A DNA stretch of 48,524 nt from Octopus bimaculoides. Taxonomy: Eukaryota. Position 1 is the first letter of the stretch. Every line of letters begins with the position of its first letter. Where the stretch lies: the NCBI RefSeq assembly GCF_001194135.2, contig NC_068983.1:160953939-161002462 (forward strand), in the 5' to 3' direction. Below are positions 1 through 43,629 of the stretch, one piece after another. Below the pieces are notes generated by a model that was given only the letters and a program-made list of their open reading frames with translations, was not told where the DNA came from and ran no database searches. A program made the position numbers and the translations under genes.

Positions 1-111
1 AAGAAAAAGAAGAAGAAAGAAGAAGAAGAAGAAGAAGAAGAAAAAGAAGAAGAAGAAGAAGAAGAGGAAGGAGAAGAAGAAGAAGAAGAAGAAGAAGAAA
101 AAGAAGAAAGA

Positions 112-148
<37 letters not shown>

Positions 149-164
149 AGAAGAAGAGGAAGAA

Positions 165-195
<31 letters not shown>

Positions 196-240
196 AAGAA
201 GAAGAAGAAGAAGAACAAGAACAAGAAGATGATGATGATG
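1..240. repeat. Purine-rich compound microsatellite (GAA)n/(GAAA)n ending in (GAT)n
   Basis: Direct reading of the sequence. Confidence 0.95.
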
Positions 241-1066
241 GTTACGGTGATGTAATTAGAGAATCAGAGAGTGATGTAGTGAGTGAGGTAGGCATTTAAC
301 CTTTGTGTTAATAATAGAGAGAAAAGAGAGAAAAAGACAGAGTGAGAGAGAGTGAGAGAGAGTGAGAGCTCAGAAAGTAAAAAAATAAAATAAAATTGAA
401 TAAATACAAGTTTATAAGTGTGACAGATTAGCCAAAAACAACACGAGCCTGTAAAATATAAATGTTAGAATGATAAGCAGAGCAGTACGTAAAAAAATAC
501 AGCTAGATTGAAAGATAGAACAGCTTCAAGCTAGTTAAATACTTCGCCAGGCAAGCTTTAAAGATGTCTTCATTAGAAAATGTGTCTGCTCTATTGTTCT
601 TAATCTAATGTCTTATTCTGGCCTAATGAGATCTATTTTGAAGTTTCTAAATTTACCTACAAATGTTACTGTCTTATTATTACTGAAATGCAATATCCTA
701 TTAATTGTCTTACCATACATTAAATACCATCTACGGTGGAACATCTAAACGATAGGGTCACGTGACTGACCTTGACATACACACGCAACCCAAGCATGTA
801 AACCAAGGAGGGGAAAAAAATCTGTAAATGCTCTTAATGATAAGTAATAATGTATGTAATATGAGCGCTTACAAATATTGATGTTCTATGCCAAATGCAG
901 TTGAAAGCAGAGGGGCTTCCGAATTTATGCATACGCACAGATACACGCAAACGCGCACACGTAAGTACACTCATAAATATTCGCACACATGTGTATGCGT
1001 ATATGCATGTATGTATATGTGTGTATACGTCACGTATGGATGATATGCGTGAGTGTGTATATATCT

Positions 1067-1305
1067 TTTATATTTTACTTGTTTCAGTCATTGGACTGCG
1101 GCCATGCTGGGGCACCATCTTGAAGAATTTTAGTCGAATGAATTGACCCCAGTACTTTTGTCATTTATTTTAAGCCTTGTTCTTATTCTATCGGTCTTTT
1201 AGTCAAACCGCTAAGCTACGGGGACGTAAACACGCCAACACCAGTTGTTTAGCAGTGATGGGGAACAAGCACATACACGAAGACACATACACACACACAC
1301 GCACA
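1067..1305 (-). mobile_element. SINE family A, 3' half
   Basis: Reverse complement aligns by eye with the 3' half of the full copy at 47728-48121 (gtccccgta..ttagcggtt; gtactggggtc; ggtgccccagcatggccgcagtc; gaaacaagtaaaa). Confidence 0.8.
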
Positions 1306-1491: not shown

Positions 1492-2035
1492 ATAGAGTGC
1501 AAAAACGAACATTTTTATCTTTTACATCCTTAAAGGCAAGAAAGCTGCTTAGGTTCACAAAGAGATGTATGAAGTCTGTGGTGTTCTTTGCTTAACAGAA
1601 CGCACATGTCAGAAATGGTTATAAAAATTCTGTTCTGGATAAATATTATGGTCGACCAACTGAAGTTGAATCTGATTATCATATAATTGTGCGAGAGATT
1701 GCAGAGAGGTTAAATGTATCACACACAACAATTGAAAATCACTTAAAATGTCTTGGACTCGTTAAGAAGCTCGATATCTGGGTTCTACATAAATTGAAAG
1801 AGATTCACTTAACACAACCAATCAATATTTGCGACTTGCATTTCAGACGCAACAAAATCGACCTTCTTTTTGAAACGAATCAACACTGGTGATGAAAAAT
1901 GGACGTCTACAGTAACATCAATTGAAAACGATCATGGTCCAAGCGTAGTGAACCAGTACAAACCACATCGAAAGCTGAATTGCATAAAAAAAAGGTCATG
2001 CTATCAATTTGGTGGAATTACAAAGGTATTGTGTA
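1492..2035 (+). pseudogene. Mariner transposase pseudogene, N-terminal part (HTH to first catalytic D)
   Basis: ORF 1689-1892 REIAERLNVSHTTIENHLKCLGLVKKLDIWVLHKL (WVPHEL motif), then GDEKW near 1890 and KKVMLSIWWNYKGIVY at about 1989-2035; frameshifts and stops. Confidence 0.9.
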
Positions 2036-2149
2036 TGTAGTGAAACTACCTCCCGTCACTAGATACAAAACTACTATCGCCATTACATACAATCTTCTCA
2101 TTTAAATATAAATAAATGCGAGCGTAGTAGAGAACCCATTCCTTGTCAT

Positions 2150-2291
2150 CACGTGACTGATTATTATTCGAATCGGCAACTACTTCGAACCTTTCCCGCC
2201 AGAACGCAAACTGACCAATCACGGCCCCTAATAAGGTCACGTGATAGAGTATATTTCTACCATCTGGTGAGCCAATAGTTTGTTATAAATA
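2150..2291 (+). promoter_or_regulatory. LTR-U3-like Pol II promoter motif cluster
   Basis: CACGTG at 2150 and 2238, CCAAT at 2215 and 2272, TATAAATA at 2284-2291; AATAAA at 2988 and 3121 downstream. Function is inferred. Confidence 0.45.
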
Positions 2292-3195
2292 GCTTTAACT
2301 CGGCAATCAAATTTGTCACGGTCCAGTTTCTCTTTGAGAACTGTTCCGTGTACCACACAACNNNNNNNNNNNNNNNNNNNNNNNNNNNNNNNNNNNNNNN
2401 NNNNNNNNNNNNNNNNNNNNNNNNNNNNNNNNNNNNNNNNNNNNNNNNNNNNNNNNNNNNNNNNNNNNNNNNNNNNNNNNNNNNNNNNNNNNNNNNNNNN
2501 NNNNNNNNNNNNNNNNNNNNNNNNNNNNNNNNNNNNNNNNNNNNNNNNNNNNNNNNNNNNNNNNNNNNNNNNNNNNNNNNNNNNNNNNNNNNNNNNNNNN
2601 NNNNNNNNNNNNNNNNNNNNNNNNNNNNNNNNNNNNNNNNNNNNNNNNNNNNNNNNNNNNNNNNNNNNNNNNNNNNNNNNNNNNNNNNNNNNNNNNNNNN
2701 NNNNNNNNNNNNNNNNNNNNNNNNNNNNNNNNNNNNNNNNNNNNNNNNNNNNNNNNNNNNNNNNNNNNNNNNNNNNNNNNNNNNNNNNNNNNNNNNNNNN
2801 NNNNNNNNNNNNNNNNNNNNNNNNNNNNNNNNNNNNNNNNNNNNNNNNNNNNNNNNNNNNNNNNNNNNNNNNNNNNNNNNNNNNNATCACTCACATACAC
2901 ACTTTTCTTTGTATGACGGCCTGTCTTTGATTATGTTCTTATATGTCGCATTCACACTCACACGCAGACATACATCTTTAACGCTATAATAAATATCTCT
3001 GTTATTCATCTTATACGGTTGTGGTCTTTCATTACTGGTCATCTATGTTATCGTCGCATAACATATCATGTATATCATCATTTGATATATTATCGCGTGT
3101 ACGACCGTGTGACCCGTTTAAATAAAAGGAGTCCTCTGTTTTTCCATTCGTCACCATATCTCCTTTTATGAGTTCGCACGGTCGTCCCTTACAAT

Positions 3196-3206
3196 TGGTG
3201 ACCCCG
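3196..3206 (+). other. Primer-binding site complementary to the tRNA-Trp 3' end
   Basis: TGGTGACCCCG equals the first 11 nt of the canonical tRNA-Trp PBS TGGTGACCCCGACGTGAT and lies 2 nt after an LTR-like ...CCCTTACA end at 3193. Confidence 0.65.
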
Positions 3207-3255
3207 GCGATAGTAGTTTTGTATCTAGTGACGGGAGGTAGTTTCACTACATGTA

Positions 3256-3667
3256 TTTTGAGCTGCTTCCAAGGAACCACACGATCAATTCGGATGTTTA
3301 CAGTCAACAGCTAAAGAAACTGAAAGAAGCAATCAAAGAAAAACGACCAGAATCGGCCAATGGTAATAGAATAGTGTTCCACCATGGCAACGCTAGACCA
3401 CACACGTCTTTGCTAACTCATGAAAGATCATTGGAGCTTCGTTAGGAAGTGATGTCACATCCACCCTATAGCACTGATCTTGCACCATCAGATTACTATT
3501 TATTTCGAAGTTAGCAAAATTCTTTGAATGGTAAACATTTCAATAATGATGATGACCTGAAATCGCACTTGCTTCAGTATTTGGCTGATAAGGACCAAAA
3601 GTTCTAGGATCGCGGGATCATGAAATTGCCAGAAAGATGGCAAAAGGGCATCGAACAATATAACTGA
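3256..3667 (+). pseudogene. Mariner transposase pseudogene, C-terminal catalytic part
   Basis: FELLPRNHTINSDVYSQQL...IVFHHGNARPHT (second D mutated to G), then EVMSHPPYSTDLAPSDYYLFRS (YSPDL motif); stops. Confidence 0.9.
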
Positions 3668-4112
3668 TTAAAGTTCATTCTTAGTATGAATAAAGATGAC
3701 TTTTATTTCACACTATAAAACCGAAATTTCATTCTTGCNNNNNNNNNNNNNNNNNNNNNNNNNNNNNNNNNNNNNNNNNNNNNNNNNNNNNNNNNNNNNN
3801 NNNNNNNNNNNNNNNNNNNNNNNNNNNNNNNNNNNNNNNNNNNNNNNNNNNNNNNNNNNNNNNNNNNNNNNNNNNNNNNNNNNNNNNNNNNNNNNNNNNN
3901 NNNNNNNNNNNNNNNNNNNNNNNNNNNNNNNNNNNNNNNNNNNNNNNNNNNNNNNNNNNNNNNNNNNNNNNNNNNNNNNNNNNNNNNNNNNNNNNNNNNN
4001 NNNNNNNNNNNNNNNNNNNNNNNNNNNNNNNNNNNNNNNNNNNNNNNNNNNNNNNNNNNNNNNNNNNNNNNNNNNNNNNNNNNNNNNNNNNNNNNNNNNN
4101 NNNNNNNNNNNN

Positions 4113-7833: not shown

Positions 7834-9544
7834 TTATCACCTTTTTTCATTTCATTGCCTTTTTCCAGTTCTTTATCCTTTTACAATTTTTCTTGTATAT
7901 GATTTAGATCCGAGTTTTCGAGAGTAAAAAGGCCTCATGAACCTTAACCTAATCAAAATAAGAAACGCTTTTCCTAGAAATTAATTCAATTACAAAAGAT
8001 AAAAGGAAAAAGCAAAAGCATTATCGACCTCAACATCATCATCCACAGCTACAAGATGGAGATTATCAATGGTTTGTGCACCCGGCATTTATTATAAGTC
8101 ACAAACGTATTTAGGTGCTGAACTGGAAAGTGTACAGAAACAGCTAGCTGCCTCTGTCTTGAAAAGAGCCATGAAGTAGCTGAAGAAAGTCAAATGATTC
8201 ATAGGACAACCTAACTTCTCAGAACGTCTGTTATCAGCGCAATATGAGAGGTTCACATTAAAGCAAAGCAAATTAAGAATATTTTTCACTTTTCTCGATA
8301 CAGTGATTTCCCGGTCAAAATTTTTTATGAGTTTGACGTCCTTCCTAAGCAACACAGGTTTTACTAACCTGAATAAGAACTCTGAAGATCACATCTCTTA
8401 TATGGTGAAATCAAAATCTATTTGAGAACGCTTGGTCGTATGTTACTGCAGACGGAGACATGAAAGCACATAGGTTGGGTGGAAGGTGTTGGGGTTAAAA
8501 TACACTTTGTCAATTCAAACTTCGAAAATAGAAATATTGCATTAGCAGAAACTCTGGATCAAAAAAGTACGATGTACGGATGTTTAAAAGAATTGTTTTT
8601 GTCAACCAATCTGTAAATAGATAATATTCAATCGTAGAAACTCAAACTCTGTGCAGCGGGATCACAGTGGAGTAAACGAGTTGACAAATATATTGTTATT
8701 TTGTATATCTGAATTTAGAATCCTTCTTTGCGGGTATTGCAAAGGTTTCGGTTCCATCTGGCTAGTGCGTCGCAGTAAACTGCACGAAAATCTAATGGCT
8801 AAAGGCACTTAACACAAAATACTATTTGCAAAACGATGAAACTTCAGAGAAATCAAAAGTCAAATCAAAATTCAATTTGAAATAAAGCGTTTTAAAAGAC
8901 AATTGATTACTGACTAATTGATAAAAAAATAACTGCAATAATGATTATACTAATGAGAGATAGTACGATTGGACATACATTTTTTTCTTTGTGTATAAAA
9001 ATATGACAATGATGATATCAACATAATTCTCTTTAATTCTCTCTAGAAATGCAGACCATTATAATATAGAAGCTATTGTGATGCTGAGCATGTTTAATAA
9101 TGTGACTGTTACTAGACTAATCATCTAAAACGAATTAATATAAGGGTGGGCGCGGTTTCAAACATCTTATTCGTGCTCAAATGAATTTAGTCAAAATATT
9201 GTGCTATGTCCTTTCATTAGGCACATTACAATACTTGTGAGGGTTTACTTGGCATAAAAGTAAGGAAGAGTTTGTCAGAAATCAAAACTACCGAGACTTC
9301 TTGCTTAAAACTACAAGAACTGGATATAAAATTCTGGCACTTTGAGTCACATATGCGTGGACACACACACACACACACACATACACACACATAAGCACGC
9401 GCGCGCACACGCACACGAATATATACATAAGCGAGCACAACTCTTTTGTTAACTGACATGGGTTGTTCAAATTGCGCGTGTTGATGTAGACTAACTATTC
9501 CTCTATAATAACTTTTTTCCGATTCTTCCTCATTGCAAACAAAT

Positions 9545-9926
9545 TTGTTGTTGTTGGCACTCCGTCGCTTACGACGTCGAGGGTTCCAGTTGATCCGATC
9601 AACGGAACAGCCTGCTCGTGAAATTAACGTGCAAGTGGCTGAGCACTCCACAGACACGTGTACCCTTAATGTAGTTCTCGGGGATATTCAGTGTGACACA
9701 GTGTGACAAGGCTGACCCTTTGAATTACAGGCACAACAGAAACAGGAAGTAAGAGTGAGAGAAAGTTGTGGTGAAAGAGTACAGCAGGGTTCGCCACTAT
9801 CCCCTGCCGGAGCCTCGTGGAGCTTTAGGTGTTTTCGCTCACTCACAACGCCCGGTCTGGGAATCGAAACCGCGATCCTATGACCGCGAGTCCGCTGCCC
9901 TAACCACTGGGCCATTGCGCCTCTAC
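9545..9926 (-). mobile_element. SINE family B, full length and young, with 10-bp TSD
   Basis: rc head GGCGCAATGGCCCAGTGGTTAGGG...GTTTCGATTCCC (A and B boxes), (CAA)n tail; TSD gcaaacaaat at 9535-9544 and 9927-9936; about 8 substitutions and one 7-bp indel versus 28422-28812. Confidence 0.92.
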
Positions 9927-10069
9927 GCAAACAAATAATAGTTTTTGTAGATGGAATAGTGTAGGTTCTACATACACAGAAAACTACAGGTTGTTTACGG
10001 AGAGAGCACTTTTTGACAAGTGGAATATGTGCAGATAGATGAACAAGTTAAGGGAAGGGAATACTGGCA

Positions 10070-13789: not shown

Positions 13790-14400
13790 TGGGAGATAAC
13801 AGTTTACTCAAAGTAGTAGCCCTCAGGTCTCAAGACGGCTCCAAAACCTGATACATGCGTTTCTCATTGTGTCCCCGGGAAGATCTTCGAACACTTCTTT
13901 TATCTTGGCCACCAGCTCGACCTTGGTTTTACAGGCAGAGCGGATGGTTTCTTTCTCAATAGCGCTCCACACATAGTAATCCATAGGATTACAATCGTAG
14001 AAATTAGAGGGCCAGAAAAGGGGGCTAATGAAGTCATAGAAATTCTCCGACAACACATTCTGACTCTTTTCAGAGGTATGGCTAGGAACAGAATCTTGCT
14101 GGTACACATGTGGCTTTCCAGCAGCAACCCTCTCCGGCCAGGGATTGACCACAATCTCCATCAACTTCCCATAGCCGTTTGAGTTGAGCCTAATGCCCTG
14201 TTCAAAGATAAAGGGATGAATTCCGGCGTGCTGACACAGTCAGAACACATGCTGAGCCCTTTCGTGTTGGCCACGGCTTTGTTGTCTCCATTGCAGCTGT
14301 CCATTTCACATGTTACAGTCTTTACAGAGTCCCTCGAGGATTGAGTAGCAGTCATGATGTCGGTATTTTGATCATTATGATACAGGTAACTTCTTCCCGA
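13790..14400 (-). mobile_element. Decayed DD37D (maT/Bmmar1-type) Tc1/mariner-superfamily transposon, catalytic C-terminal part
   Basis: ORF 13823-14164 has QQDSVPSHTSEKSQ...FWPSNFYDCNPMDYYVW with 37 residues between the second and third D by my count. Upstream in frame is PFIFEQGIRLNSNGY. A possible TIR remnant tacaggatgttt lies at about 13697. Confidence 0.85.
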
Positions 14401-16011: not shown

Positions 16012-16262
16012 ACCGGCAGGATCATTAATGCGTCGGTCAAAATGTTTTATAGCATTTCTTCCGGCTCTTTTACGTTCGCAGTTCAAATTCCGCCAAGGTC
16101 AGTTTTACCATTCAAATTTTCGGGATCAATAAAATAAGTACCAGTTGAGCATTGGAGACAATATAATCGACTTGCCCCTTCCCACTAAAATTTCTGGCCT
16201 TCTGCCAAATTTAAAGAGAACTATTATTATTATTATAACTATTATTATTATTATTATTATTA

Positions 16263-16299
<37 letters not shown>

Positions 16300-16540
16300 G
16301 GCGACAAGATGCTCAGCGGCATTTCTTTCGGTTCTTGACTTTCTGAGTTCAAATTCCGGCGAGGTCGACTTTGCCTCCATCCAATCGGTGTCGATAAAAT
16401 AAGTATCTGTTAAGAGCTAAGGTCGATGTAATCGGCTAGAATTCATCACACTAAATTCCAAGCCTTCTGCCTAAAGTAGAAAAAATTATTATTAAGAAAG
16501 CGTTGACCTGGCAGAATCGTTAGCACTCTAGACAATGCAT
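16012..16540 (+). mobile_element. Head-to-tail cluster of three SINE family C copies (16012-16220, 16298-16495, head only 16497-16540) separated by (ATT)n tails
   Basis: The first two contain (g)ttcaaattccg...gtc.a.ttt.cc and gataaaataagta; the third has ctggcagaatcgttagcac; (ATT)n at 16223-16297. Confidence 0.8.
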
Positions 16541-19290
16541 CTTTCCCAGCGCGCCAAGCTTACAAAGATCGATTTCCGAATTAGTTGAGCGTACGTTGAC
16601 AGGGACAATAATCAACAACAAATGGTTCCCTCTGAGAAAAGGTGATTAGAGTAGAATTGATAAGGTTCAGTAAGGTTTTAGCGATAAATTAAAGTAGAAA
16701 ACGACTTAGGAACTTAGGAGAAGCGCTTAGGAAAGGCGATATTGACTCTCGACAAATTATTCAACGCGAAGCGCGAAAACTGCATTATCAGAGTTTAGGC
16801 GCATATTCTTAGAGACGTGGAGATAAGAGTCGTTCGATTGGCCCGTGTGGCGAAGTCGCAACTTGGTATTAAAGCCATGATTTGTTTTCTGATGGACCAT
16901 AATAGGTACATGTTACTTGTCTCCAAGATAATGAGTGTAGTTTTTAAGCAGCGTCTCAGTGGACTGTTCAGGATGAATGGCGGGTCGAAATGCACGATGG
17001 ATTTCAGAGTTCAGCTCAGCAAGCGAGGTGAAGTGTTACGAAAAGCACGTAACTGCCTCAGAAATACGGGAGGAAATGGTTGGTTGCACAGCGATCAAAT
17101 ATGCTTGGTCTTTCTTGCGAATCGAGAAGTGATAGCGCTACTGAGAGAGGACAAACAAGAGAATTACATTGATAATTTTTTACCCATACCTCTGCTAAAC
17201 TCAGATTTCAGAATTTTTGCCAAGGTGTTAACAAGGCAACTGGTGCTTGTCGTCAATGGTCTAATCGGTGATGAGCATATATGCTCCATTCCGAACAGAT
17301 CTATCAACAATAACTTCCATCTTCTCCGATACATAACATAGAAGGTAGGCAATGAAACTGGCATGAGTGGGGTGGCCCTGATTAACTTGGATCAAAGAAA
17401 GGCTGTCGATAGGGTCGACCACCAGTACTTGGTGATAGTCTTCAACAAAGTCGGTTTGGCTCCTATTCAGAAGGTGGGCCGCTGCAATGTACATTTGCTT
17501 GCTGGTTAAGTTAGGGTGAATGGCCACTCATCGGAACCATTCAGGTTTATCCAGGTTACACCTTCTCGTCTTTTCTGTGTGTACTGGTTCTTAAGCCGCT
17601 CTGCTGAAACTAAACACGTTGAGGAGCATTTCGCTTGAACTAGGTGTGTGAACAACTGTGTCAGCATCAGGGGCGACGTCATCATCATAGCGTCAGAGAC
17701 CAAGCACATCGTAGAGATGTGCTTGGTCACGTGGGGACAAGAGTTGTTCGATTAGCACGCATCTAAACCCTGATAATGCAGTTTTCATGCTTGGCGTTGA
17801 ATAATTTGTCGAGGGTCAAAAAGGCTGTGACAGGAGCAAAAATTCCCCAAGAAAATCAGTGGGCTTGATGCTTAACACCATGAGAATCAAGTCCGTGCTG
17901 TCCAACAGCGCTCGACGGACGGACCGGTTAAGTAGGTAGGGGTCTGATTTGTTCCAGATCTTCAAGTGAAAAAGAACAGAGACAAGGTAACTGGAAGGGT
18001 GGCCACTATCACCCACAAATGAGCAGAGAGGAAGCCCCCTGAAAGATCGAGCAAAGAGGGCGAACGTTTACATCACCTCCGTCATATAGTACCGTCATGG
18101 TTTGCCCCAGTTCATGTCTCTCCGCACTGAATCGCCTGCTCTTTTGCTTTCTATGGAAGAGACACGTTTCAATGCTTAAGCGCTCCGTTTGTCGTCAAGA
18201 CTCACTGAGTGGAGTAGTGGGCATGCCGTGGCTGATGGTGCTCAGACATCTTCTAGGACTGCAACATCTCCCACGTTTCCATGAAGATTTAGCAGGCATG
18301 GTTGCAGTTTGTGAGACTCACTTTTCCACAGCTCACCTCTTTCACAGAGCTGCAGTCCTGGATCATGCGTAGACCGGGGCAGGGCACCTGTCATCTAAAG
18401 TACTTAAAACCAAGTAATACTACAAGACAAGGAATGCGGTCGGTGCAAGTTCCACTTCGGTGTCCTATTGAGAAATCTTGGAGGGCATCATTTACGACGT
18501 TCCCAAAGAGATCCTCGGAGTCGACAAGAACCAACTGGTAGGTCTAACTTTCTGCGCGAACCCAACAAATAATCTCCAGAAATTTCTAGTTTGCCAGGGC
18601 TACTGGGATATTGCCAGTTCGAAATACCTGCAGAGCGACAAAACTATTCTGAATGTACTCGTCCAATGCCCGGGGAACGTTACTAACTTGTATAATTATG
18701 CCGAACACTTGCTGTCGTAAGTAGGTCGGTATAACAATGAGCTGTGTCCATTGTGAAGATTGTCCTGCTGTCTGCCTTTGGCGGACAAGGACAGGCAGTT
18801 TTTATCTGTCTGGTAGTCTTAAGGAAATGGATTGCATAATGGCTCAGACACACAGAGCTGAAGAGAGATACATTCCTCTTTGGCCAAGCCCGCGTCAACT
18901 TTTTCAAGATCAAATGAAAAAAAAGTGAGGGTAGAGAGGGAAGTACTGCCTTTCACAAAATTTGTTAAAAGGAAGATGAGAATAGCCAGAACAGTCCCAA
19001 TGAACGAACCGTTTTTGAGTATACACCTATAGACTGAGGAAAGAGGATAAAAAGGCACTTGCTTTAGGGTGTTTATAATTTTGTTGGGGTTTGCACGAGA
19101 AACACTCGGAAACCTACCTATTTATGAGGGAATTATTGATTGTTTGCATTTTTGTTTCTATGCTGCTGTTATTCTATTGTTTACACGCTTTTATATAGTC
19201 CCACATTGTATTGTACAGTATTGTCCTGTATCATCATCGATCTTTTTGTAAACCCTTAGTGGTTAATAAAGAAAATATTATTATTATTGT
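16541..19290 (+). mobile_element. 5'-truncated, decayed L1/Tx1-clade LINE (ORF2 RT and C-terminus, 3' UTR, (TTA)n tail)
   Basis: ORF 16817-17341 NFLPIPLLNSDFRIFAKVLTRQL...CSIPNRSINNNFHLLRY; INLDQRKAVDRVDHQYL at 17381-17431; decayed QGCPLSP region near 17550; KTILNVLVQCP near 18640; 3' end ccttagtggttaataaagaaaatattattatt. Confidence 0.9.
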
Positions 19291-19826: not shown

Positions 19827-20360
<534 letters not shown>

Positions 20361-21063: not shown

Positions 21064-21070
21064 GTACATA

Positions 21071-22301
21071 TAGAGGGTTTGGACAAAATAATGGAAACAC
21101 TTGGCATTATAGTATCATAATTTTAAAATATCTATAAAACCGTCAAAAGCTTGTTTATTTTCATGTTTTTTGATGTATTATAAAGTGTTGCTTAATGTTT
21201 TGCTAAAATTGCAGTTTCCTTTCAGATATCATCAGAAAAAGGTAATAAAAATTCATTAAAATGACAGATCTATCGGACTTTCAAAGAGGTCAAATTCTTG
21301 GTGCTTGTATGGCAGGCGCTAGCGTAATGAAAACAATCAAAATATTTGGTGTATCAAGAAGTATCGTCTCGATAGTAATGACAGCCTTTGAGAAAAAGGA
21401 AAAAGCCTCCTCATCGAAACAAAACTCTGGAAGAAAACCAAAGCTTTCAGATTGGGACCGTCGGACCCTTACGCGAATTGTAAGAAAGGATCAAAAAAGT
21501 ACTACTCTCACAATCACTGCAGAGTTTAATGACCACCTCGAGAACCCAGTTTCCACAAAAGCTGTTTGCCAGGAGCTGCACAAAGCCGGGTTTCACGGGA
21601 GGGCAGCAATCAAAAAACCACTACTTTCAAAAACAAACGTTGTAAAAGCGTTTAGAGTGGAATAAAAACCTACAGAATTGGTCCCTAGAGCAATGGAAGA
21701 ATGCTATTTTCTCGGACGAGTCATCCATTACCTTATTTCCAACCACCGGCCGAGTGTACGTGTGGAGACAGCCAAAGGAGGCATTTGACCCAGAACGCCT
21801 TCTTCCAACTATTAAACATGGAGGATGATCTATGATGATCTTGGGGGCTATATCTTGGAAATCCACCGGCCTGATAGTTTCTATTCATGGCAGAATTAAT
21901 AGTGAAGACTATTTAAGTATTTTATCGGATCAAATTCATCCTATGGTTGCTGAACTGTTTCCGGAGGGAAACGCAATCTTTAAGCATGATAATGCATCAA
22001 TTCACACAGCTAAAGTTGTTAATGAATGGCACAAGGAACATTCTAGTGAAGTTTATCATCTTGTCTGGCCACCACAGTCCCCAGATCTCAATATTACTGA
22101 ACATTTATGGTGCATTTTAGAAAAGCAAGTAAAGAGTTGATAACCTCCATCATCATCACTACAAGAACTGGAGACTGTTTTAGCTGAAGAAGGAACAAAT
22201 ATTCCTTTGGAAACAATTCAAACTTCGGACGAGTCCATACCTCGTAGAATTCAACCTGTAGTTACTGCCAAAGGCAGTACTCCATATTAAAATAAATTTG
22301 T
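21071..22301 (+). mobile_element. Near full-length Tc1-family transposon with DD36E spacing (Incomer-like); right TIR hidden in the gap
   Basis: TA at 21069-21070, then TIR-like tagagggtttggacaaaataatggaaacac. The transposase pseudogene is listed separately. The element runs into N at 22302. Confidence 0.9.
21261..22290 (+). pseudogene. Tc1 transposase pseudogene, DD36E
   Basis: MTDLSDFQRGQILG...GRKPKL...; SDES at 21712; HDNASIHTAKVVNEWHKEHSSEVYHLVWPPQSPDLNITE has 36 residues between D and E. One frameshift near 21645, stops near 21827 and 22138, terminal TAA at 22288-22290. Confidence 0.9.
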
Positions 22302-23971: not shown

Positions 23972-24200
23972 AATAATAATAATAATCCTTTCTACTAAAG
24001 GCACAAGGCCTGAAATTTGGTGGGAGGAGACTAGTCGATTACATCGACTCCAGTGCGTAAGTAGTATATATTTCATCGACACGGAAAAGATGAAAGGCAA
24101 AATCGACCTCAGGGGAGTTTGAACTCAGAACGTAAGGACGGACAAAATGCCGCTAAGCATTTTTCCCGGTGTGCTAACGATTCTGCCAGCTCACCGTCTT
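23972..24200 (-). mobile_element. SINE family C, full length
   Basis: rc aagacggtgagctggcagaatcgttagcac...gagttcaaactcc...gcctttcatc...ccttgtgcctttagtagaaagg plus (ATT)n tail. Confidence 0.88.
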
Positions 24201-24216
24201 AATAATAATAATAATA

Positions 24217-24251
<35 letters not shown>

Positions 24252-24354
24252 AACTAGCTGAACCCGTGAAAATTTCACAGAAAATATAAAAAATGTAAGC
24301 ATCTATAAATTGTGTGCTGATGCCATGAGAAATGTTTCTATACTGTGACAGTTA

Positions 24355-24576
24355 AAGGCGGCGAGCTGGCCGAAACGTTAGCACGCCGGGTGAAATGCTT
24401 AGCGGTATTTCGTCTGTCTTTATGTTCTGAGTTCAAATTCTACCGAGGTCGACTTTGCTTTTCATCCTTTCGAGGTCAATAAATTAAGTACCAGTTATGT
24501 ACTGGGGTCGATCTTAACGACTGGCCCTTTCCCACCAAAAATTTCAGGACTTGTGCCTATGGTAGAAAAGTATATT
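24355..24576 (+). mobile_element. SINE family C, full length
   Basis: aaggcggcgagctggccgaaacgttagcacg...gagttcaaattc...cttgtgcctatggtagaaaag; close match to 38041-38254. Confidence 0.9.
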
Positions 24577-24720: not shown

Positions 24721-26120
24721 ACCGTTATGTCGAGGTCCAGACATTTCCTTAACAGCACTGCGACCCGCCTCCCATTCCGGGCCGACTAAGATATGCGTAG
24801 ATCTCATAATAGTCGAAAATAGGTGCAAGATCGCGTGTGTGGGAAATCTTGGTCTCACTGGCTGCTATCACATCCAAACCCAGCGACCTTAGGTCATTGA
24901 TCAAGCGACCTTGCTTCCAGGGTGACCCCAATCGCGAACATGTATGCAGCCCATTCTGACAATCGCCATGACAGCTCGAAAGGGTTGGGGAAAAGAAAAA
25001 AAGAGCAGGGTTATTTATCTTCCTTGAGCTATTGGCTGCCCGGTGATCCGGGCTCCAGATCTGGTCGTGATTCCTCAGAGAAACCGGCGAAAAGCTTCTT
25101 CGGGATAGAGACGTTTGGCCTTCCCACATCGTGCGGGAAATCCTTCTGAATCTCTTTCTAAACTTTGAGAGGTAGCCGAATTAGCGTAAACTCCACTCTC
25201 TCTCTCAATTTCCTTGTCTCTGGCTATGAGGGTCATCAAATCTTTGTTGGTTCTTCTCATGGGTACGTAATTGGGTGTTTCTGTATTGGTTGCTGTGAGC
25301 TTTCTTATAGGGGCTACGTGTGATTGTAAGTGCATTGGTGGATTTGGTTCAGATAGTGGTGGTTGTGGGGAGGGTGGTGCCGGTGTTGAATTTGCTGGGT
25401 CTATCTTCGATGTGCTTGGGATGGCTGTGTTTTCAGGTGCTGGTGTAGGTTCATCTGTTTTCTTTTTCATTTGTCTTTTACGTTTTTTTTTTTTTTTTTT
25501 TTTTGCTTTGTAAGGTACTTCCTCAGCTTCACTACGAGTTGAGTAGGGACTAGTGTCTGTAGGATCTGTGTCGGGGAATGTGGGGGTGTCTGTGATAGTG
25601 TGAGCGTGTGTGTGAGTGTATATTTGAGAGAGGGGTGAGGGGGCTGGTTTCACAGATACCCTGGGAAGTTTTCTCAATTGTATGGGGTTCACATGCCTCT
25701 TTTGTTGTTGGAGATGAGGCTGCACTTTTATTAAAAGTCCTCTGTTGTTGATTTTGTTCAGGGTGCGATGTAGGTTGCAGGTGTGATTGCGTACTTCCCA
25801 ACTTTTAGGGGCAGAAGGCTCTTAAGTGGCTTGTGGCCCCGCAGATGTCGCATCTGAGCTTCCTGTCTTCCATGACGACACGTAGTTCCACCCAGTTGAG
25901 CAGCTGGATCAGGTCCGGGATCTTCTCAATATTTATTAGTTTTACATGGATTAATACTTCCAAGTTGACCCCCGCACCAGTTTTCCCTGCTGCTCCTTTT
26001 TACTTCCAGGTGTGACTATGGGTCCTGCACCACACAGGCGGCAATCCACCAGACTTTTACGCCCGGTGGCACGTTATTTGTCGTAATTCTGGTTGTTCTC
26101 TTTAAACCAAATATATGGCA
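24721..26120 (-). mobile_element. L1/Tx1-clade LINE 5' part: ORF1 with CCHC zinc knuckle and the start of ORF2 APE endonuclease; 3' part missing
   Basis: rc of about 25808-25852 gives CDICGATSHLRAFC (C-X2-C-X4-H-X4-C). Low-complexity ORF1 tail is ORF 25075-25725. EN start GSPWKQGRLINDLRSLGLDVIAASETKI...GMGGG..VLLRKCLDL at about 24935-24725. Confidence 0.85.
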
Positions 26121-26221: not shown

Positions 26222-26307
26222 AGATGATGATAATAATAATAATAATAATAATAATGATAATAATAATACTACTACTACTAATAATAATAATAATAATAAT
26301 AATGATG

Positions 26308-26367
<60 letters not shown>
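26222..26367. repeat. (TAA)n microsatellite
   Basis: Direct reading. Confidence 0.95.
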
Positions 26368-26369
<2 letters not shown>

Positions 26370-26904: not shown

Positions 26905-28421
26905 GCGAAAAAATAGAAATGCATCCAATAATATGACATAATTTACATTGTGCATACTCTGCCTAATCTCCGTCCAGCACTAAAATGCATAACAATATAT
27001 GCGAAACAAACATCACCGAAGAATCTAACATGGTTCACAGAGCTCATATTTTATGAGTGATAGACTAAGTCTGACGTCTGGCATAACACCACCACAAAAC
27101 ACCTTGGTTGCTTTTAGCGGAGTTCGCTCCCTTGCAAGTATTGAGAATTTCTTTCTTCTTCCATTCAGAGTCGCAAAGGCCGTGTGAATGGTTCTGGTAA
27201 TGCCTTCTCTTCTGACAAAGTGATTTTAAGAAAATTCAAGATAACAAACACGTGAAACACTGAAGAAGTAACTCAATAGACAGCATAACAAACCCCACCA
27301 CAAAGCATAAAGAGTTGACACCCACAAGCACGATTCCATAATGCTGAAAGATAATCTTGTAAGCACATCTTCTGAGTGTGGGTCACGGTTCTCCTAGCGA
27401 AACAACTTCAACAGCAATATCAGCAACAACGAAAGCAACAAAACGCTTTAAATTTCTCTTCCATTCAATGAAGACAACACGGATTGCAGTGGATCCGGTT
27501 TTTAAAGCCAACGAGTGAAAGCATCATACATATTTCGGTATAATAGGACCTCCTCAGGGAAGCATTTTCTGTTTAGTTGGCAAAAACGAGAGTGATCAAT
27601 GTGCACAGAGTAAATGTAGTTAAGCTTAGGAGTCAATATCAACAATGTATATTTTACACACGCACATACACATGCGATCGCACGCACACACGCACGCACA
27701 CATACTCACACACACACTCACACTAAATAATAGCTTGTTGATAAATTTCGATTGAGTGATAGAATCAAACCGATTAGTAGATAAAATCTCCTTCTACAGG
27801 TGCTTAAAATATAAACAACAAACGAAGCGGGATAATGATAGGCTGTAGCTGATGCATATGTTTTAAAGGCAGTGGGGTGGAATCCGTTTTTAACAGAAGG
27901 TAGGGATAGAGAAACAGAAACACGCCTCCCAAAGGTAGAACGATAGACTTTAACATGGAATCTATTAATAATTTTATAAACATAAAAGAGAGAAGTTAAA
28001 CATAAAGGTGAAATATCGGAGTTAAGCAATGTTGCTATTGTTTATATTTTAAGAAAATGTTTTAATGTATTTCTTAGCCGAAAATATTGTCCAGAAGATA
28101 TTTTCAAGCTTAATTATTTACTTTCAGAGTCCTTTCAAAATTGTTTTTATCCTGTATGCTTGTAACCACTTGAATGCCAACCGATTCTACAGAAGCATGG
28201 CAAATTTACATTCTATTTCATTCAATATGAAAAAAAGAAAAATATGATCTCATTTTAAAGTAAAAGAAAATGCGGTTTCTTTTTGTTTTTTGTTTCTTTT
28301 TTTCCTTCTGTGTTACTGATAAAACCACTGGGATTCATATAACACAAGAAGAGTTAGTGAAAAAATATAAATAAATCAGACTCGAAATATCAAATTTACC
28401 ACTCAACGAAATAATGAATTA

Positions 28422-28812
28422 TGTTGTTGTTGGCACTCCGTCGCTTACGACGTCGAGGGTTCCAGTTGACCCGATCAACGGAACAGCCTGCTCGTGAAAT
28501 TAACGTGCAAGTGGCTGAGCACTCCACAGATACGTGTACCCTTAACGTAGTTCTCGGGGATATTCAGCGTGACACAGTGTGACAAGGCTGACCCTTTGAA
28601 TTACAGGCACAACAGAAACAGGAAGTAAGAGTGAGAGAAAGTTGTTGTGAAAGAGTACAGCAGGGTTCGCCACCATCCCCTGCCGGAGCCTCGTGGAGCT
28701 TTAGGTGTTTTCGCTCAATAAACACTCACAGCGCCCGATCTGGGAATCGAAACCGCGATCCTATGACCGCGAGTCCGCTGCCCTAACCACTGGGCCATTG
28801 CGCCTACACTAT
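28422..28812 (-). mobile_element. SINE family B, full length and young, with 14-bp TSD
   Basis: TSD gaaataatgaatta at 28408-28421 and 28813-28826; about 98% identical to 9545-9926 by manual count. Confidence 0.92.
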
Positions 28813-29906
28813 GAAATAATGAATTAACTGACAGTCGAAAAGAAGAAGAGAGCCGACTTCTGTCATCTAGGTATAATGCAAGTTGCATCGAAGAATAGTC
28901 GATTGTGTCGAACCTTATCAAATGCTCTTCTTTCATCGACTGTTAATTGATGAAAGTTTTTTTAAAAATGTACATTAGAAGTTACCTAAAAAAAATGATC
29001 TAGGATTTTCATCAGCTAATATGAAATGATACAAACTCATATTTTTCTCAAGTTGAAATGAAATATCTCTAGTTAGTTTTACATGCTGTTATTGTCATTC
29101 TTATTACTGTTACAGCTGCTGCTACTGCTGATGTTGTTGTTGCTGCTGCTCTACTACTACTACTGGTGCTGCTACTGGTATTCAGAAAAAAACTTAACCA
29201 GTCAATAAAAGAGCTGTTGCAGTTGGTAGCAAATAAAATGATTAAGGTGCATCTAAACTTGTTTGTTTCAATGTTTCCTATATTCATCACTAGCTATTAA
29301 TTTCAAGGGAAACCTCTAGCCTCTACGGCGACAGACAAGCTTGAATTCAGCTTTTCAGTATTACGAAGACTGATGTACAATTAATTGCCTTAAAGAGCTA
29401 AATTCCTTTACACTTCAGTTGGCTCTCCAACGAACTCCCGACGGAGAAGTATAGCTTTTTACAAGTTCCTTGCCAAATACCTCTGAAGAGCGCTCAACAA
29501 GAGTCTAAGAGGAGCCAGGTCTCCTCCTGCTGGAGCCTAAAGATTGTTACAAAATGAGATTTGTCTGCCAACATCGTGAAAACCTAAGATATTTCAGGCT
29601 AGAGATACATATGCGTTGTTTATGTGTGTGATTGTAACTGTGAGTATGCGAATAAAATAAAATATATATGTACGTAAATATCAGTGTCCGCGCGTGCCTT
29701 CAGAATTACTTGATTATTTTATGAGAATATATTTTCTAAACATTTTTGTTCTGCATTTTTACATTTTTTAGGACAAGTAGTTCTCAATAGCGACGGACAA
29801 CGTGTTTTTACATATTTTTTTTTTTGTTTGTTTGCTTGTTTCTTAATAACCTAAGTATAAAATATTAACAAGCTTTCTGTATATATACATACACACACAC
29901 ACGCAC

Positions 29907-33201: not shown

Positions 33202-33370
33202 AACACAACACCGCTTGACAATCGGTGTTGGTTTGTTTATGTTCCCGTAACCTAGCGGTACGGCAAAGAGTCGGATAGAACAAGTACCAGGTTTTAAAAA
33301 GTAAGTACTGGGATCGATTTGTTCGACTAAACTCTTCAAAGTGGTACTCCAGCTTGGCCACAGTCTAATG
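32958..33370 (+). mobile_element. SINE family A, nearly complete with expanded internal (CA)n
   Basis: gggttcagtcccactacgtaacaccttgggcaa...gacggaaact...ccgcttgacaatcggtgttgg...gtactgggatcgatttgttcgact...ggccacagtc. Confidence 0.85.
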
Positions 33371-35779: not shown

Positions 35780-35990
35780 ATTTCAAATTTTGGTACAAGA
35801 CCAGCAATTTCAGGGACTGGAGTAAGTTGATTACATCGATCGCAGTGTCCAACTGGTACTTATTTTATCGACGCTGAAAGCGTGAAAAGCAAAGTCAACC
35901 TCGATGGAATTTGAATTCAGAGCGTAAAGACGGGTGAAATGTCGCTAAGCATTTTGCCCGGCATGCTATCAATTCTGCCAGCTCGCCTTC
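35780..35990 (-). mobile_element. SINE family C, full length
   Basis: rc gaaggcgagctggcagaattgatagcatgccgggcaaaatgcttagcg...gaattcaaattcc. Confidence 0.85.
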
Positions 35991-38040: not shown

Positions 38041-38254
38041 GGCGGCGAGCTGGCAGAAACGTTAGCGCGCCGGCCGAAATACTTAGCGGTATTTCGTCTA
38101 CCGTTACGTTCTGAGTTCAAATTCCGCCGAGGTCGACTTTGCCTTTCATCTTTTCGGGGTCGATAAATTAAGTATCAGTTGCGTACTGTGGTCAATCTAA
38201 TCGACTGGCCTCCTCCCCAAAGATTTCGGGCCTTGTGCCTAGAGTAGAAAAGAT
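38041..38254 (+). mobile_element. SINE family C, best-preserved copy (preceded by a decayed family A remnant at about 37895-37992, minus strand)
   Basis: A-box-like tggcagaaacg, B-box-like gagttcaaattcc (38113-38125); core gcctttcatcttttcggggtcgataaattaagta, which resembles the Meta SINE domain as I recall it. Confidence 0.9.
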
Positions 38255-40367
38255 ATACAAGCAAGCTAAGCGGTATGAAACAAAGATTGACCAAACATTA
38301 TAATTTCATATTCTAAGACAAAACTCATAGACTGATAAAGAACATAGAGTAAAGAAACACCAGGTGAGACAGCTTACAAGTATCTTATATTTTATGGGAG
38401 ATAATGCGACAAAATTAAAAGCATCTGTAACTAAACGTTGATTGAATATTATCACTATTTTAATTCGAGCTTTAAATGAAGGTTTGCCTGAAATTAGAAA
38501 ATGCTTACTCATCAAAAATGAGCCTGCTCATTAAAATTGTATCAACTTAACAGTATACTCTTTTTCATGTTCCAACCTGCGATCTGGGGCCATGCTGGAA
38601 CAATGATGTTGCTACATTTTTACTCTCTCTTACGTTTCTTGAAAAATGTAAGTATAAATATATTTCTACTGAACATCTGAATTTTAGGATGATCCTTTTG
38701 ATCAATTTCATTTTATATAATGAGAATTCTTGAAATTACTCTAGATTTACAGAGAATTCTAGTACTTCATCTCCAAAAGGAGTTGCTCCTTAGAAGCAAT
38801 ATGAAAAAAAGTACTAAGAGGAATGCGCAAAGTTACACTGTCGAAGTATAAAACACGAAGCTTTTATGAAAGAAAAAACTTTGGAAATTTGAAAAAAAAA
38901 ACCAGTACATTTAAAAGAACGAAAACACAACTATTTGAGAATAAACAAGAAAGAGTTAGAAGTAAAAAGTAAAAAGAAATTAGTTCGAGTTTGTGTTAAC
39001 GGCGTCTTTCTATGGCGACAGACGCACTGTCATTGTCTGATAGAATCATACTGTGCCACTTGAGATGGCTACAATTCTCTCACAGAAATGCCCCTTCCTA
39101 CAAACAAAAATGTCACATCTACAAGATTGACATCTTATCTTACAATACGCCTAATCATTGCAGCGACTTGTGTGACGTTTTAACGAGCATTGCAGTCTGT
39201 CTACAAAGCTGTCTGCTTTAGGTAGAAGGCCGTTACGTGTTTCCTCAGAAGCTGAATGACTGACTATATGTGAAGAAAATATATATTTATGAAATACAAA
39301 ATCTACCCTTTACACACAAACAAAACACACAAGCACACGCAACCATTTGCTTACACATAAATATACATTTAGATACACACACATACTGACAATTTTTATC
39401 TGCCTGTTTACATATTTGTGCCTACGAAAGTATTTGTATATAAGTCAATATTTTCAAAGGTAGTTGAGAGGAAGAGGGATCACAAAGAAAGATGGCGTCA
39501 GGGTTGTTTGTTACATGAACTGTGGTGGCAATATCCTATCTTTATATTGTTCACCATGTCTGGGTTATGTTCTGTAGATTTGTGTATTTAACAGTTGAGC
39601 TAGCAATTTTGTAATACTAGTGGCACCTAACACTATGCATACATATCGATTATAAGTATACATGTAACCTGTTCGGTCAGGTTTGTTCTCACCTTTAAAA
39701 AAAAACAGTTCCGTTTTCTCAATACGTTTGTGTGAATCAATCATAGCTGGCTTGAACATTCCGCTGACTTTGTAATGCCAGGTAGTAATTACATGAAAAA
39801 GTAATGTCAACTACGGCTTCTATAATTATAGTCTTAATACTACATGATTTTGAAATGGGTTACTAATTCTATTTTAAAAACATTTGACGCTTCATTCTGT
39901 ATTATCTATATGACATGATTGTAAGCTGGTTTTATAGAAGTTCGATCAATGTAAGTCGGGCAGAGCCGGTTCAGATTTCTTTTCTTTACCCGTGTAACCT
40001 TGTATAAAATGGTTTGCAATATGTCTAGTTGTGAAAATAGCTGTTATAAAATTCTCGAAGAACATCTGACAGACCCAGAATAATGAATTCTATTACTTTA
40101 AAATCGAAGCTTTAGTATTTTATATTTTGTTAACATTAGTGTAAAGAAGGTGATTATTTTATCGATCTCTGCGCTATACACACACACACTAATAACACCT
40201 GGACTAATAACACCTAGGAATCAAATTAAATGACAACGGTTTAAGCCGTCAATTCAAACAAGTTCATCAATGAAAACAGTAATTTTGTGACTAGCGCAGT
40301 AGAGCAAGAAATATACTAGCGAAATGAAACGACTGAACTTCACATGGGCAAATGAATACCGTATTGC

Positions 40368-43371: not shown

Positions 43372-43629
43372 TTTTTATCTTTTATCTTTTATTTGTTTCA
43401 GTCATTAGATTGTGGCCATGCTGGTGCAACGCCTTGAAGAATTTTAGTCGAATGAATCGACCCCAGTATTTTTTTTAAGCCTGGTACTTATTCTATTGAT
43501 ATATTTTGCCGAACCGCTATGTTACAGGGACGTAAACACACCAACACTAGTTGTCAAGCGGTGGTGGAGAAACAAACGCAGACATAAAGACACACAGAGA
43601 TACATACATATACACACACACACACACAG

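What the first reader, a model, noticed from the sequence alone, without database searches (positions are those of the whole stretch)
2036..3251. LTR + tRNA-Trp PBS closed by an inverted copy of its own first 46 bp: an LTR-retroelement-derived TIR element with a 4-bp TSD
Seen: a perfect 46/46 TIR (2036-2081 vs 3206-3251), TGT...ACA termini and TSD TGTA. The empty site restores the mariner frame GIVYFEL, so this is one young integration event. The interior has E-box, CCAAT, TATA and AATAAA motifs in U3-R-U5 order, then ...CCCTTACA, a 2-nt spacer and TGGTGACCCCG; the last G of that PBS is the first base of the right TIR. Established: plus-strand strong-stop DNA of LTR elements is U3-R-U5-PBS; Gypsy-type integrases join TG...CA ends with 4-5 bp TSDs; Ginger DNA transposons use Gypsy-like integrases with TGT ends, long TIRs and 4-bp TSDs. 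Inference: strong-stop DNA folded back or switched template onto its own 5' end, giving a molecule with two U3 attachment ends that integrase inserted. If there are many copies, this is an LTR-derived MITE-like family and a possible LTR-to-Ginger bridge. Caveat: 524 N hide the middle.
Basis: partly seen in the sequence, partly recalled or inferred. Interest (0 to 1): 0.8.

Follow-up and report, generated by a model that had tools for sequence, protein, structure and literature searches.

The report
Retroelement-like insertion with inverted ends
A roughly 1.2-kb mobile-element insertion in a dead mariner of an octopus genome has perfect 46-bp inverted ends and a 4-bp target duplication like a Ginger-type DNA transposon, yet inside its right end it carries what looks like the end of a retrotransposon LTR followed by a tRNA-Trp primer site. 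With one copy, an unread middle and no access to the rest of the genome, its origin cannot be settled here.

Summary
There are perfect inverted arms at 2036-2081 and 3206-3251, TGTAG...CTACA termini and a TGTA target-site duplication. Both flanks abut at one position of one decayed mariner transposase. The string TGGTGACCCCG (3196-3206) matches all 11 nt of CCA + discriminator + acceptor strand of tRNA-Trp. It is unique in the window and sits 2 nt after TTACA; chance expectation for that combination is about 5e-5. TATA/CCAAT motifs (left) and AATAAA plus a T-rich stretch (right) lie in the same orientation.

Every terminal feature (46-bp TIR, TGTNR, 4-bp TSD, alternating purine-pyrimidine target) fits published Ginger2 criteria as well as a Gypsy-type integrase. 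The TATA-to-AATAAA distance of about 840 bp is long for an LTR. 524 N hide the middle. No second copy, parent provirus or transposase could be reached: all DNA scans, three protein-level searches and look-ups found nothing. The source is an octopus, whose genome these tools cannot search.

The strong-stop template-switch origin, the copy number and the "LTR-to-Ginger bridge" idea remain untested. My best reading is an LTR-retroelement-derived, integrase-inserted element (about 0.4). The main rival is a plain Ginger2-like non-autonomous transposon (about 0.3).

The parts
2032..2035 (.). Left copy of the 4-bp target-site duplication, TGTA
   Evidence: The flank frame maps to mariner profile position 44 on both sides.
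2036..2081 (+). Left 46-bp terminal arm. It begins TGTAG, contains the mini-palindrome GTAGT-gaa-ACTAC and a direct repeat AAACTAC at arm positions 8 and 33.
2082..2361 (+). Left interior with promoter-like motifs, all on the + strand: E-boxes 2150 and 2238, CCAAT 2215 and 2272, TATAAA 2284. Putative U3 and start of R if this is an LTR; putative 5' promoter region if this is a gutted DNA transposon.
   Evidence: No Pfam hit or homologue for its open frames.
2362..2885 (.). Assembly gap of 524 N (length only estimated). Both contig edges are CA-rich, so a CA-type microsatellite may lie here.
2886..3193 (+). Right interior: AATAAA at 2988 and 3121, a T-rich stretch after 3121, and a nested hairpin at 3101-3185. 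It ends CCCTTACA (putative LTR 3' end; TTACA is the complement of TGTAA, so it fits TGTNR).
   Evidence: (z = -2.1). LTR hallmark list from PMC3601003.
3194..3195 (+). 2-nt spacer AT between the putative LTR end and the PBS
3196..3206 (+). PBS-like 11-mer TGGTGACCCCG, complementary to the CCA + discriminator + 7-nt acceptor strand of tRNA-Trp. Its last base is shared with the right arm.
3206..3251 (-). Right 46-bp terminal arm, the exact reverse complement of 2036-2081
3252..3255 (.). Right copy of the target-site duplication, TGTA
1596..3667 (+). Host: the recognisable transposase frame of a decayed mariner, interrupted by the element. Breaks counted: one insertion (this element) and six in-frame stop codons. 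No frameshift is needed across the recognisable part. The element ends of the mariner were not determined; the right side runs into the gap at 3739.
   Evidence: PF01359 Transposase_1; HTH hits in the N-terminal part.

Best explanation
This is a non-coding, roughly 1.2-kb insertion that a retroviral-type DDE integrase placed into an old mariner copy, acting on two identical TGTAG... ends and leaving a 4-bp duplication. The DNA most likely derives from a Gypsy-type LTR retrotransposon. It reads as one LTR (promoter motifs, then a polyadenylation signal, then ...TTACA), the 2-nt spacer and a tRNA-Trp primer-binding site, and then an inverted copy of the LTR's own first 46 bp that supplies a second U3-type integrase end. 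Shown: the arms, the TSD, the clean interruption of the mariner and the exact 11-nt tRNA-Trp complement in LTR-end context. Inferred: that both halves are one LTR; that the arm was added when plus-strand synthesis left the tRNA template after 11 nt, resumed on the 5' end of a plus strand and ran off at its end, which would explain why the arm stops exactly at the element terminus; and that integrase then used the two U3 ends. Whether this was a one-off product or a small family is unknown. Contigs read across both junctions without breaking, which argues against a young high-copy family.
For: Arms are 46/46 and the TSD is TGTA. Both flanks meet at position 44 of the mariner profile. The PBS 11-mer is identical to the tRNA-Trp antisense including the post-transcriptional CCA. 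It is the only occurrence in 48.5 kb, with the next best at 2 mismatches. The composition-corrected expectation for any-tRNA 11-mer with YTACA 0-5 nt upstream in the 692 read bases is about 5e-5, assuming about 50 tRNA 3' ends. The 5' end TGTAG and the 3' end TTACA both satisfy TGTNR, and TATA, AATAAA and a GT/T-rich stretch are present in the order and orientation listed as LTR hallmarks. The PBS abuts the inner edge of the arm exactly, which this model explains and the rivals do not. A 2-nt spacer after CA is what integrase 3' processing expects (established knowledge). The target TGTGTAT alternates pyrimidine and purine, as for gypsy.
Against: Only one copy is seen and its middle is unread. 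No parent provirus, solo LTR or second copy was found, although the source genome could not be searched. The distance from TATA (2284) to AATAAA (3121) is about 840 bp, which implies an atypically long R and short U3 for an LTR but is natural for a gutted DNA transposon. Every terminal feature also fits Ginger2. The arm contains an internal direct repeat (AAACTAC twice), as transposase-binding TIRs often do. The proposed origin needs several unobserved steps and does not explain how the second strand across the PBS-arm joint was made. I know of no precedent and found none in the literature searches I ran. The PBS was noticed after the fact, so the chance figure should be relaxed by one to two orders of magnitude.
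Confidence: 0.4

Rival explanations
1. It is an ordinary non-autonomous Ginger2-type (or other integrase-class) cut-and-paste DNA transposon. The 46-bp TIRs are transposase binding sites, the promoter motifs on the left and the polyadenylation signal on the right are remnants of the deleted transposase gene, and the PBS-like 11-mer is coincidence.
For: Published Ginger2 criteria are TIRs of about 45-297 bp, 4-bp TSD, TGTNR termini and the target RTATAY. Here the TIR is 46 bp, the TSD is 4 bp, the terminus is TGTAG and the target GTGTAT matches 5 of 6 positions and is RYRYRY. The promoter-to-polyA distance of about 840 bp suits a gutted gene. The arm carries an internal direct repeat. Ginger elements occur in molluscs.
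Against: The exact 11-nt tRNA-Trp complement including CCA, 2 nt after TTACA and flush with the arm, has a chance expectation of about 5e-5 before allowing for after-the-fact search. No Ginger or Gypsy integrase remnant is in the window or the fetched loci. The read interior has no coding signal.
Confidence: 0.3
2. It is a Ginger-type non-autonomous element whose interior is filler DNA copied from an LTR retrotransposon (LTR 3' part plus PBS) during repair. The PBS is then genuine, but the arms are unrelated to that LTR's U3.
For: This explains a real PBS together with Ginger-like termini. Internal capture of foreign DNA is common in non-autonomous DNA transposons (established knowledge; gene-fragment capture is documented for GingerRoot).
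Against: It requires the capture breakpoint to fall exactly at the inner edge of the right TIR with no subterminal parent sequence left. No parent of either kind was found.
Confidence: 0.1
3. It is a solo LTR of an ordinary LTR retrotransposon whose LTR happens to carry unusually long (46-bp) terminal inverted repeats. The 4-bp TSD comes from normal retrotransposition followed by LTR-LTR recombination, and the PBS-like string inside it is chance or a dead relic.
For: Solo LTRs are the commonest LTR-element remnant. The TG...CA ends, TSD, TATA and AATAAA all fit.
Against: Conserved LTR terminal inverted repeats extend only about 7 bp, and integrase specificity lies in the terminal 8-15 bp. A perfect 46-bp repeat has no known role. 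A working PBS inside an LTR would regenerate a shorter LTR at the next replication cycle, so the PBS would have to be chance (argues against that).
Confidence: 0.08
4. It is an assembly artefact: the right-hand 853-bp contig is chimeric or misplaced, and the inverted arm does not exist in the animal.
For: The contig 2886-3738 is short and has gaps on both sides. The repeat length of 47 nt is in the range of assembler k-mer sizes.
Against: The junction ...CACTACA|TGTATTTTGAG cannot be built from an empty site or from a normal LTR junction, and it needs real reads. TSD, orientation and mariner profile position agree on both sides. The PBS-arm joint shares only 1 nt, too little for a graph mis-join.
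Confidence: 0.04

Closest known systems
Ginger2/TDD DNA transposons (Bao, Kapitonov and Jurka 2010, PMC2836005)
   Same: TIR length range, TGTNR termini, 4-bp TSD, an alternating purine-pyrimidine AT-rich target, and presence in molluscs.
   Different: No transposase or remnant was seen. The right subterminal region carries an LTR-end + tRNA PBS signature that Ginger elements are not reported to have. The TSD is TGTA rather than the preferred TATA core.
Gypsy-type LTR retrotransposon: 5' LTR plus PBS, equivalent to the sequence content of plus-strand strong-stop DNA
   Same: TGT...ACA ends with about 5-nt complementarity (TGTAG / TGTAA), TATA then AATAAA then a T-rich stretch, a 2-nt spacer, an 11-nt PBS covering CCA + discriminator + acceptor strand, a 4-bp TSD and a YRYRYR-type target.
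   Different: There is a single LTR and no second direct LTR, PPT or gag-pol. The right terminus is an inverted copy of the U3 start instead of a U5 end. The implied R is very long.
MITEs and other internally deleted non-autonomous TIR elements
   Same: Short, non-coding, perfect TIRs and an intact TSD.
   Different: At about 1.2 kb it is larger than typical MITEs. Copy number is unknown and probably low.
Sirevirus and HIV U3 5'-end complementarity with sequence upstream of the PPT (cited in PMC3601003)
   Same: The start of U3 is complementary to an internal sequence of the same element.
   Different: There the partner lies upstream of the PPT and is short. Here the partner follows the PBS, is 46 nt and perfect, and forms the element's terminus.
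DIRS-type retroelements (inverted terminal repeats plus an internal complementary region)
   Same: A retroelement with inverted termini and internal complementarity to the termini.
   Different: By established knowledge, DIRS elements use a tyrosine recombinase and make no TSD, lack TG...CA ends and have no tRNA PBS. Here a 4-bp TSD, TGT...ACA ends and a PBS are present.

Membership tests
Ginger2/TDD | Terminal inverted repeats of about 45-297 bp | tested here: met
   46-bp perfect arms. Range taken.
Ginger2/TDD | Termini TGTNR | tested here: met
   TGTAG at both ends. Criterion.
Ginger2/TDD | 4-bp TSD (5 bp in TDD) in an RTATAY-type target | tested here: met
   TSD is TGTA. The 6-nt context GTGTAT matches 5 of 6 and is RYRYRY.
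Ginger2/TDD | An autonomous relative encoding an H2C2 + DDE Gypsy-like transposase between the same TIRs | not testable with these tools
   There is none in the window or in L001/L002 (tblastn, all E > 0.7). The source genome cannot be searched.
Ginger1 | TSD CCGG or CCGT | tested here: not met
   The TSD is TGTA. Criterion.
GingerRoot | 6-bp (up to 8-bp) GC-rich TSD and 100-150-bp TIRs | tested here: not met
   4-bp TSD and 46-bp TIR. Criteria.
LTR retrotransposon LTR (Gypsy-type) | TG...CA ends with short inverted repeats of about 7 bp | tested here: met
   TGTAGTG... and ...CCTTACA, with TGTA shared and both ends fitting TGTNR. This holds only if 3193 is taken as the LTR end.
LTR retrotransposon LTR (Gypsy-type) | TATA box, AATAAA and a GT-rich stretch, in that order and in one orientation | tested here: met
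   However, the spacing of about 840 bp is atypical and spans the unread gap.
LTR retrotransposon LTR (Gypsy-type) | A PBS complementary to a tRNA 3' end within a few nt of the LTR end | tested here: met
   11/11 to tRNA-Trp at offset 2. The comparator is the human tRNA-Trp; the octopus tRNA-Trp was not available.
LTR retrotransposon (as an element) | Two direct LTRs, a PPT and gag-pol, or a solo LTR with a U5-type right end | tested here: not met
   The right terminus is the inverted U3 start. There is no direct repeat between the halves and no coding signal.
LTR retrotransposon family of origin | Proviruses or solo LTRs elsewhere with the same LTR and PBS | not testable with these tools
   All collection scans were empty, but octopus genomes are not in those collections.
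MITE-like family | Many copies with the same ends and different TSDs | not testable with these tools
   One copy in 48.5 kb and none in 41 kb of L001/L002. Contigs cross both junctions, which hints at low copy number.
DIRS | No TSD and tyrosine-recombinase-type ends | tested here: not met
   A 4-bp TSD and TGT...ACA ends are present.

The most novel reading that the evidence does not exclude
The element is one member of a small family in which a Gypsy-type LTR + PBS acquired an inverted copy of its own U3 end and has since been moved as DNA by a retrotransposon integrase. That would be a living example of the LTR-to-TIR conversion that Bao et al. (PMC2836005) said was needed, but unexplained, for a retrotransposon origin of Ginger transposons.
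Probability: 0.1. Interest if true: 0.85.

Novelty: new variant of a known kind. Interest (0 to 1): 0.5.

Why it matters
Ginger transposases are clearly related to Gypsy integrases, but the route between an element with direct LTRs that moves through RNA and an element with inverted repeats that moves as DNA is unknown; the Ginger paper says so explicitly. An insertion whose two ends are the same U3 terminus, and whose interior still carries the LTR-end/PBS junction, would show that integrase can insert DNA carrying two U3 ends in a germ line, and would show how a retroelement can acquire TIRs in one step. If it turns out to be a plain Ginger2 derivative, it is an ordinary new member of a rare superfamily in cephalopods, and it serves as a warning that PBS-like strings can mislead.

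Tried and rejected
I searched for other copies in four ways.

- Exact TIR 24-mer against viral, metagenome and prokaryote-genome collections, and the LTR-end + PBS 21-mer against viral and metagenome collections: all empty. These collections do not hold octopus genomes, so the result says nothing about the family.
- Translating the element's own open frames as they stand, to catch spuriously gene-called copies. The minus-strand frame through arm, PBS and U5 found nothing. The left-half frame found nothing. The right-half frame gave one compositional hit at 27% identity in 6 stretches, which I dismissed.
- Exact-product look-ups of three window ORFs: none on record.
- Loci reached through the Tc1-like ORF: L002 (Octopus sinensis) shares the window's repeats but not the element, and L001 (ENA) shares only the Tc1.

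Other negative results: Rfam and tRNA scans found nothing. GingerRoot, Ginger1 and DIRS were rejected on TSD and termini.

Three origins were considered and rejected on junction logic. Autointegration would join the PBS region to the LTR end, not to position 46 of U3. Nested insertions, or inversion between inverted LTRs, would leave a U5-type right junction. A tRNA-derived SINE would need a cloverleaf, and ARAGORN found none.

Nothing was saved and the joined sequence is not reproduced here. reaches the same conclusion without joining anything.

Full report
**1. What is there**

Reading 1500-3800 and the repeat finder confirm a perfect inverted repeat, 2035-2081 against 3206-3252 (47/47). That is a 46-nt arm at each end of an element spanning 2036-3251, plus one flank base. 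The element begins TGTAG and ends CTACA, and TGTA lies on both sides (2032-2035 and 3252-3255). A self-BLAST of the window finds no other copy of either half, and no similarity between the halves apart from the arms.

**2. The gap and contiguity**

The window has eleven N runs. 2362-2885 (524 N) lies inside the element and 3739-4112 follows shortly after it, so the right-hand piece (2886-3738) is an 853-bp contig with gaps on both sides. I could not close the gap.

What can be shown is that the two contigs flank the same point of the same gene.

- The right flank matches Pfam Transposase_1 (mariner, PF01359) at profile positions 43-78, E = 1.2e-11.
- The left-flank frame matches the same profile from position 30. 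Its last flank-encoded residue, the tyrosine partly encoded by the TSD, falls on position 44.
- The tyrosine encoded by the right TSD copy falls on the same position.

Together with the TSD, this makes it one clean insertion.

The host mariner is long dead. I count six in-frame stops plus this insertion, with no frameshift needed across the recognisable part.

What lies in the gap is unknown. Both contig edges are CA-rich, so a CA microsatellite, abundant in this window, is a plausible cause of the break. That both contigs run from the flank 326 and 366 nt into the element without breaking suggests the element is not a young high-copy repeat. This inference depends on an assembler I cannot identify.

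**3. Source**

The window is a repeat-rich eukaryotic scaffold with about 37% GC, no tRNA or Rfam hit, decayed mariner and Tc1-like copies and non-LTR fragments.

- The intact Tc1-like ORF is 68% identical to an Octopus sinensis protein.
- Several short repeat families of the window are 80-92% identical to an O. sinensis chromosome locus (L002).

The source is an octopus; the species was not determined. None of the searchable DNA collections holds octopus genomes, and this limits everything below.

**4. The PBS claim**

A tool-derived comparator, the antisense of human tRNA-Trp including CCA printed in bioRxiv 10.1101/400127, begins TGGTGACCCCGACGTGAT. The same 18-mer is used as an ALV/EAV PBS primer in PMC5029493.

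- Window 3196-3206 matches its first 11 nt exactly. These are CCA, the discriminator base and the whole 7-nt acceptor strand.
- Similarity then stops (14 of 18 overall).
- The match includes CCA, which in eukaryotes is added after transcription (established knowledge). This points to complementarity with, or copying of, a mature tRNA rather than a tRNA gene.
- The 11-mer is unique in the window, and nothing else comes within one mismatch.
- With the window's base composition, and assuming about 50 distinct tRNA 3' ends, a perfect 11-mer preceded within 0-5 nt by YTACA is expected about 5e-5 times in the 692 read bases.
- Relaxed 10-100-fold because the motif was noticed after the fact, chance still remains unlikely.
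- An 11-nt PBS is ordinary for LTR retrotransposons (my own knowledge).

**5. LTR hallmarks**

PMC3601003 lists the conserved LTR features: terminal short inverted repeats of about 7 bp (TGT...ACA), a TATA box, AATAAA and a GT-rich stretch. All are present on the + strand:

- TGTAGTG at the start and CCTTACA at 3187-3193, with both ends fitting TGTNR;
- CCAAT at 2215 and 2272, and TATAAA at 2284;
- AATAAA at 3121, followed by ...CTCTGTTTTTCC, 67 nt before the putative LTR end.

A nested hairpin at 3101-3185 encloses this AATAAA, but it is only modestly better than shuffles (z = -2.1).

Against the LTR reading, TATA to AATAAA is about 840 bp, including the estimated gap. That means a short U3 and a very long R, which is unusual for LTRs but natural for a DNA transposon that has lost its ORF.

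**6. The rival**

The Ginger paper (PMC2836005) defines Ginger2 by TIRs of about 45-297 bp, 4-bp TSDs, TGTNR termini and the target RTATAY. This element meets all four:

- 46-bp TIR;
- 4-bp TSD;
- TGTAG terminus;
- target GTGTAT, which matches 5 of 6 positions and is RYRYRY.

The same alternating target is the gypsy integrase preference (YRYRYR, PMC9427105), so termini and target cannot separate a Gypsy integrase from a Ginger2 transposase. Ginger1 (CCGG/CCGT TSD) and GingerRoot (6-bp TSD, 100-150-bp TIR) are excluded.

The arm contains AAACTAC twice in direct orientation and a terminal mini-palindrome, which resembles a transposase-binding TIR but could be chance. Using Ginger2 and Ginger1 core sequences from the paper's supplement, tblastn finds no integrase-like remnant in the window, L001 or L002.

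**7. Weighing**

Any explanation must account for a right junction (...CACTACA|TGTA) that only an integrase-class enzyme acting on a U3-type end would make. Normal insertion, nested insertion, inversion between inverted LTRs and autointegration all predict different junctions (see Tried and rejected).

That model alone explains why the PBS abuts the arm and why the arm ends exactly at the element terminus, because copying runs off the 5' end of a plus strand.
- Its weak points are the single copy, the unread middle, the long implied R, the unexplained second strand and the absence of precedent. My literature searches found none.

I put the LTR-derived reading at about 0.4, a plain Ginger2-like element with a chance PBS at about 0.3, a Ginger-like element with captured LTR-PBS filler at about 0.1, a solo LTR with long inverted ends at about 0.08, and an artefact at about 0.04. 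The "family" and "bridge" ideas are untested.

**8. Verdict**

This is a real and odd insertion whose nature a simple genome-wide census would settle. As it stands it is a lead, not a discovery.

Noticed in passing
window 2886-3738: The right half of the element and the right mariner flank sit on an 853-bp contig with gaps on both sides. The edges of the internal gap are CA-rich (...CCACACAAC | ATCACTCACATACACAC...), which suggests a hidden CA microsatellite.
   Followed up: partly
window 2083-2087 and 3189-3193: TTACA on the + strand occurs 1 nt after the left arm as well as at the putative LTR end, so 2036-2087 itself reads TGTAG...TTACA. The two copies are in direct orientation, not mirrored. 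Unexplained, possibly chance.
   Followed up: no
window 3150-3156: GTCACCA, in the same sense as the tRNA-Trp 3' end and complementary to the PBS, lies in the putative U5, inside the loop of the 3101-3185 hairpin.
   Followed up: no
window 21065-22301: A Tc1-like element with an intact 138-aa N-terminal ORF (21249-21662) and a DDE_3 fragment (21829-22137). It is 84% identical in DNA to a copy on an O. sinensis chromosome (L002 10179-11426).
   Followed up: partly
window 23981-24200 / 24355-24576; also 38041-38256, 35781-35990, 16015-16494: A repeat family of about 215 bp. It includes an inverted pair about 155 bp apart at 23981-24576. The family is also present in several adjacent copies in O. 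sinensis L002 17752-18316 (up to 92% identity).
   Followed up: no
window 1062-1300, 33206-33370, 43376-43607, 47877-48121: A SINE-like interspersed repeat of about 240 bp with copies 74-79% identical, also found in L002 6682-6918.
   Followed up: no
window 9542-9939 and 28417-28820: A 400-bp direct repeat pair at 94.6% identity, 19 kb apart. These are the most similar dispersed copies in the window.
   Followed up: no
window 1-229, 19941-20287, 26230-26369: Long microsatellites: (AAG)71, (ATGT)44, (TA)n/(ATATATAC)n and (ATA)47. Their translations produce the many spurious long ORFs in the ORF list.
   Followed up: no
window 16799-17338 (+), 24752-25821 (-), 13826-14239 (-): Open frames that look like a non-LTR reverse-transcriptase or endonuclease and a further DDE transposase fragment, but none gave a significant Pfam hit.
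   Followed up: partly
L001 (ENA ERZ21867824 ctg110507l): Many of the Tc1-like homologues come from long ENA contigs of an unidentified organism that shares no other repeat with the window. It is probably another marine invertebrate within a metagenome assembly.
   Followed up: no
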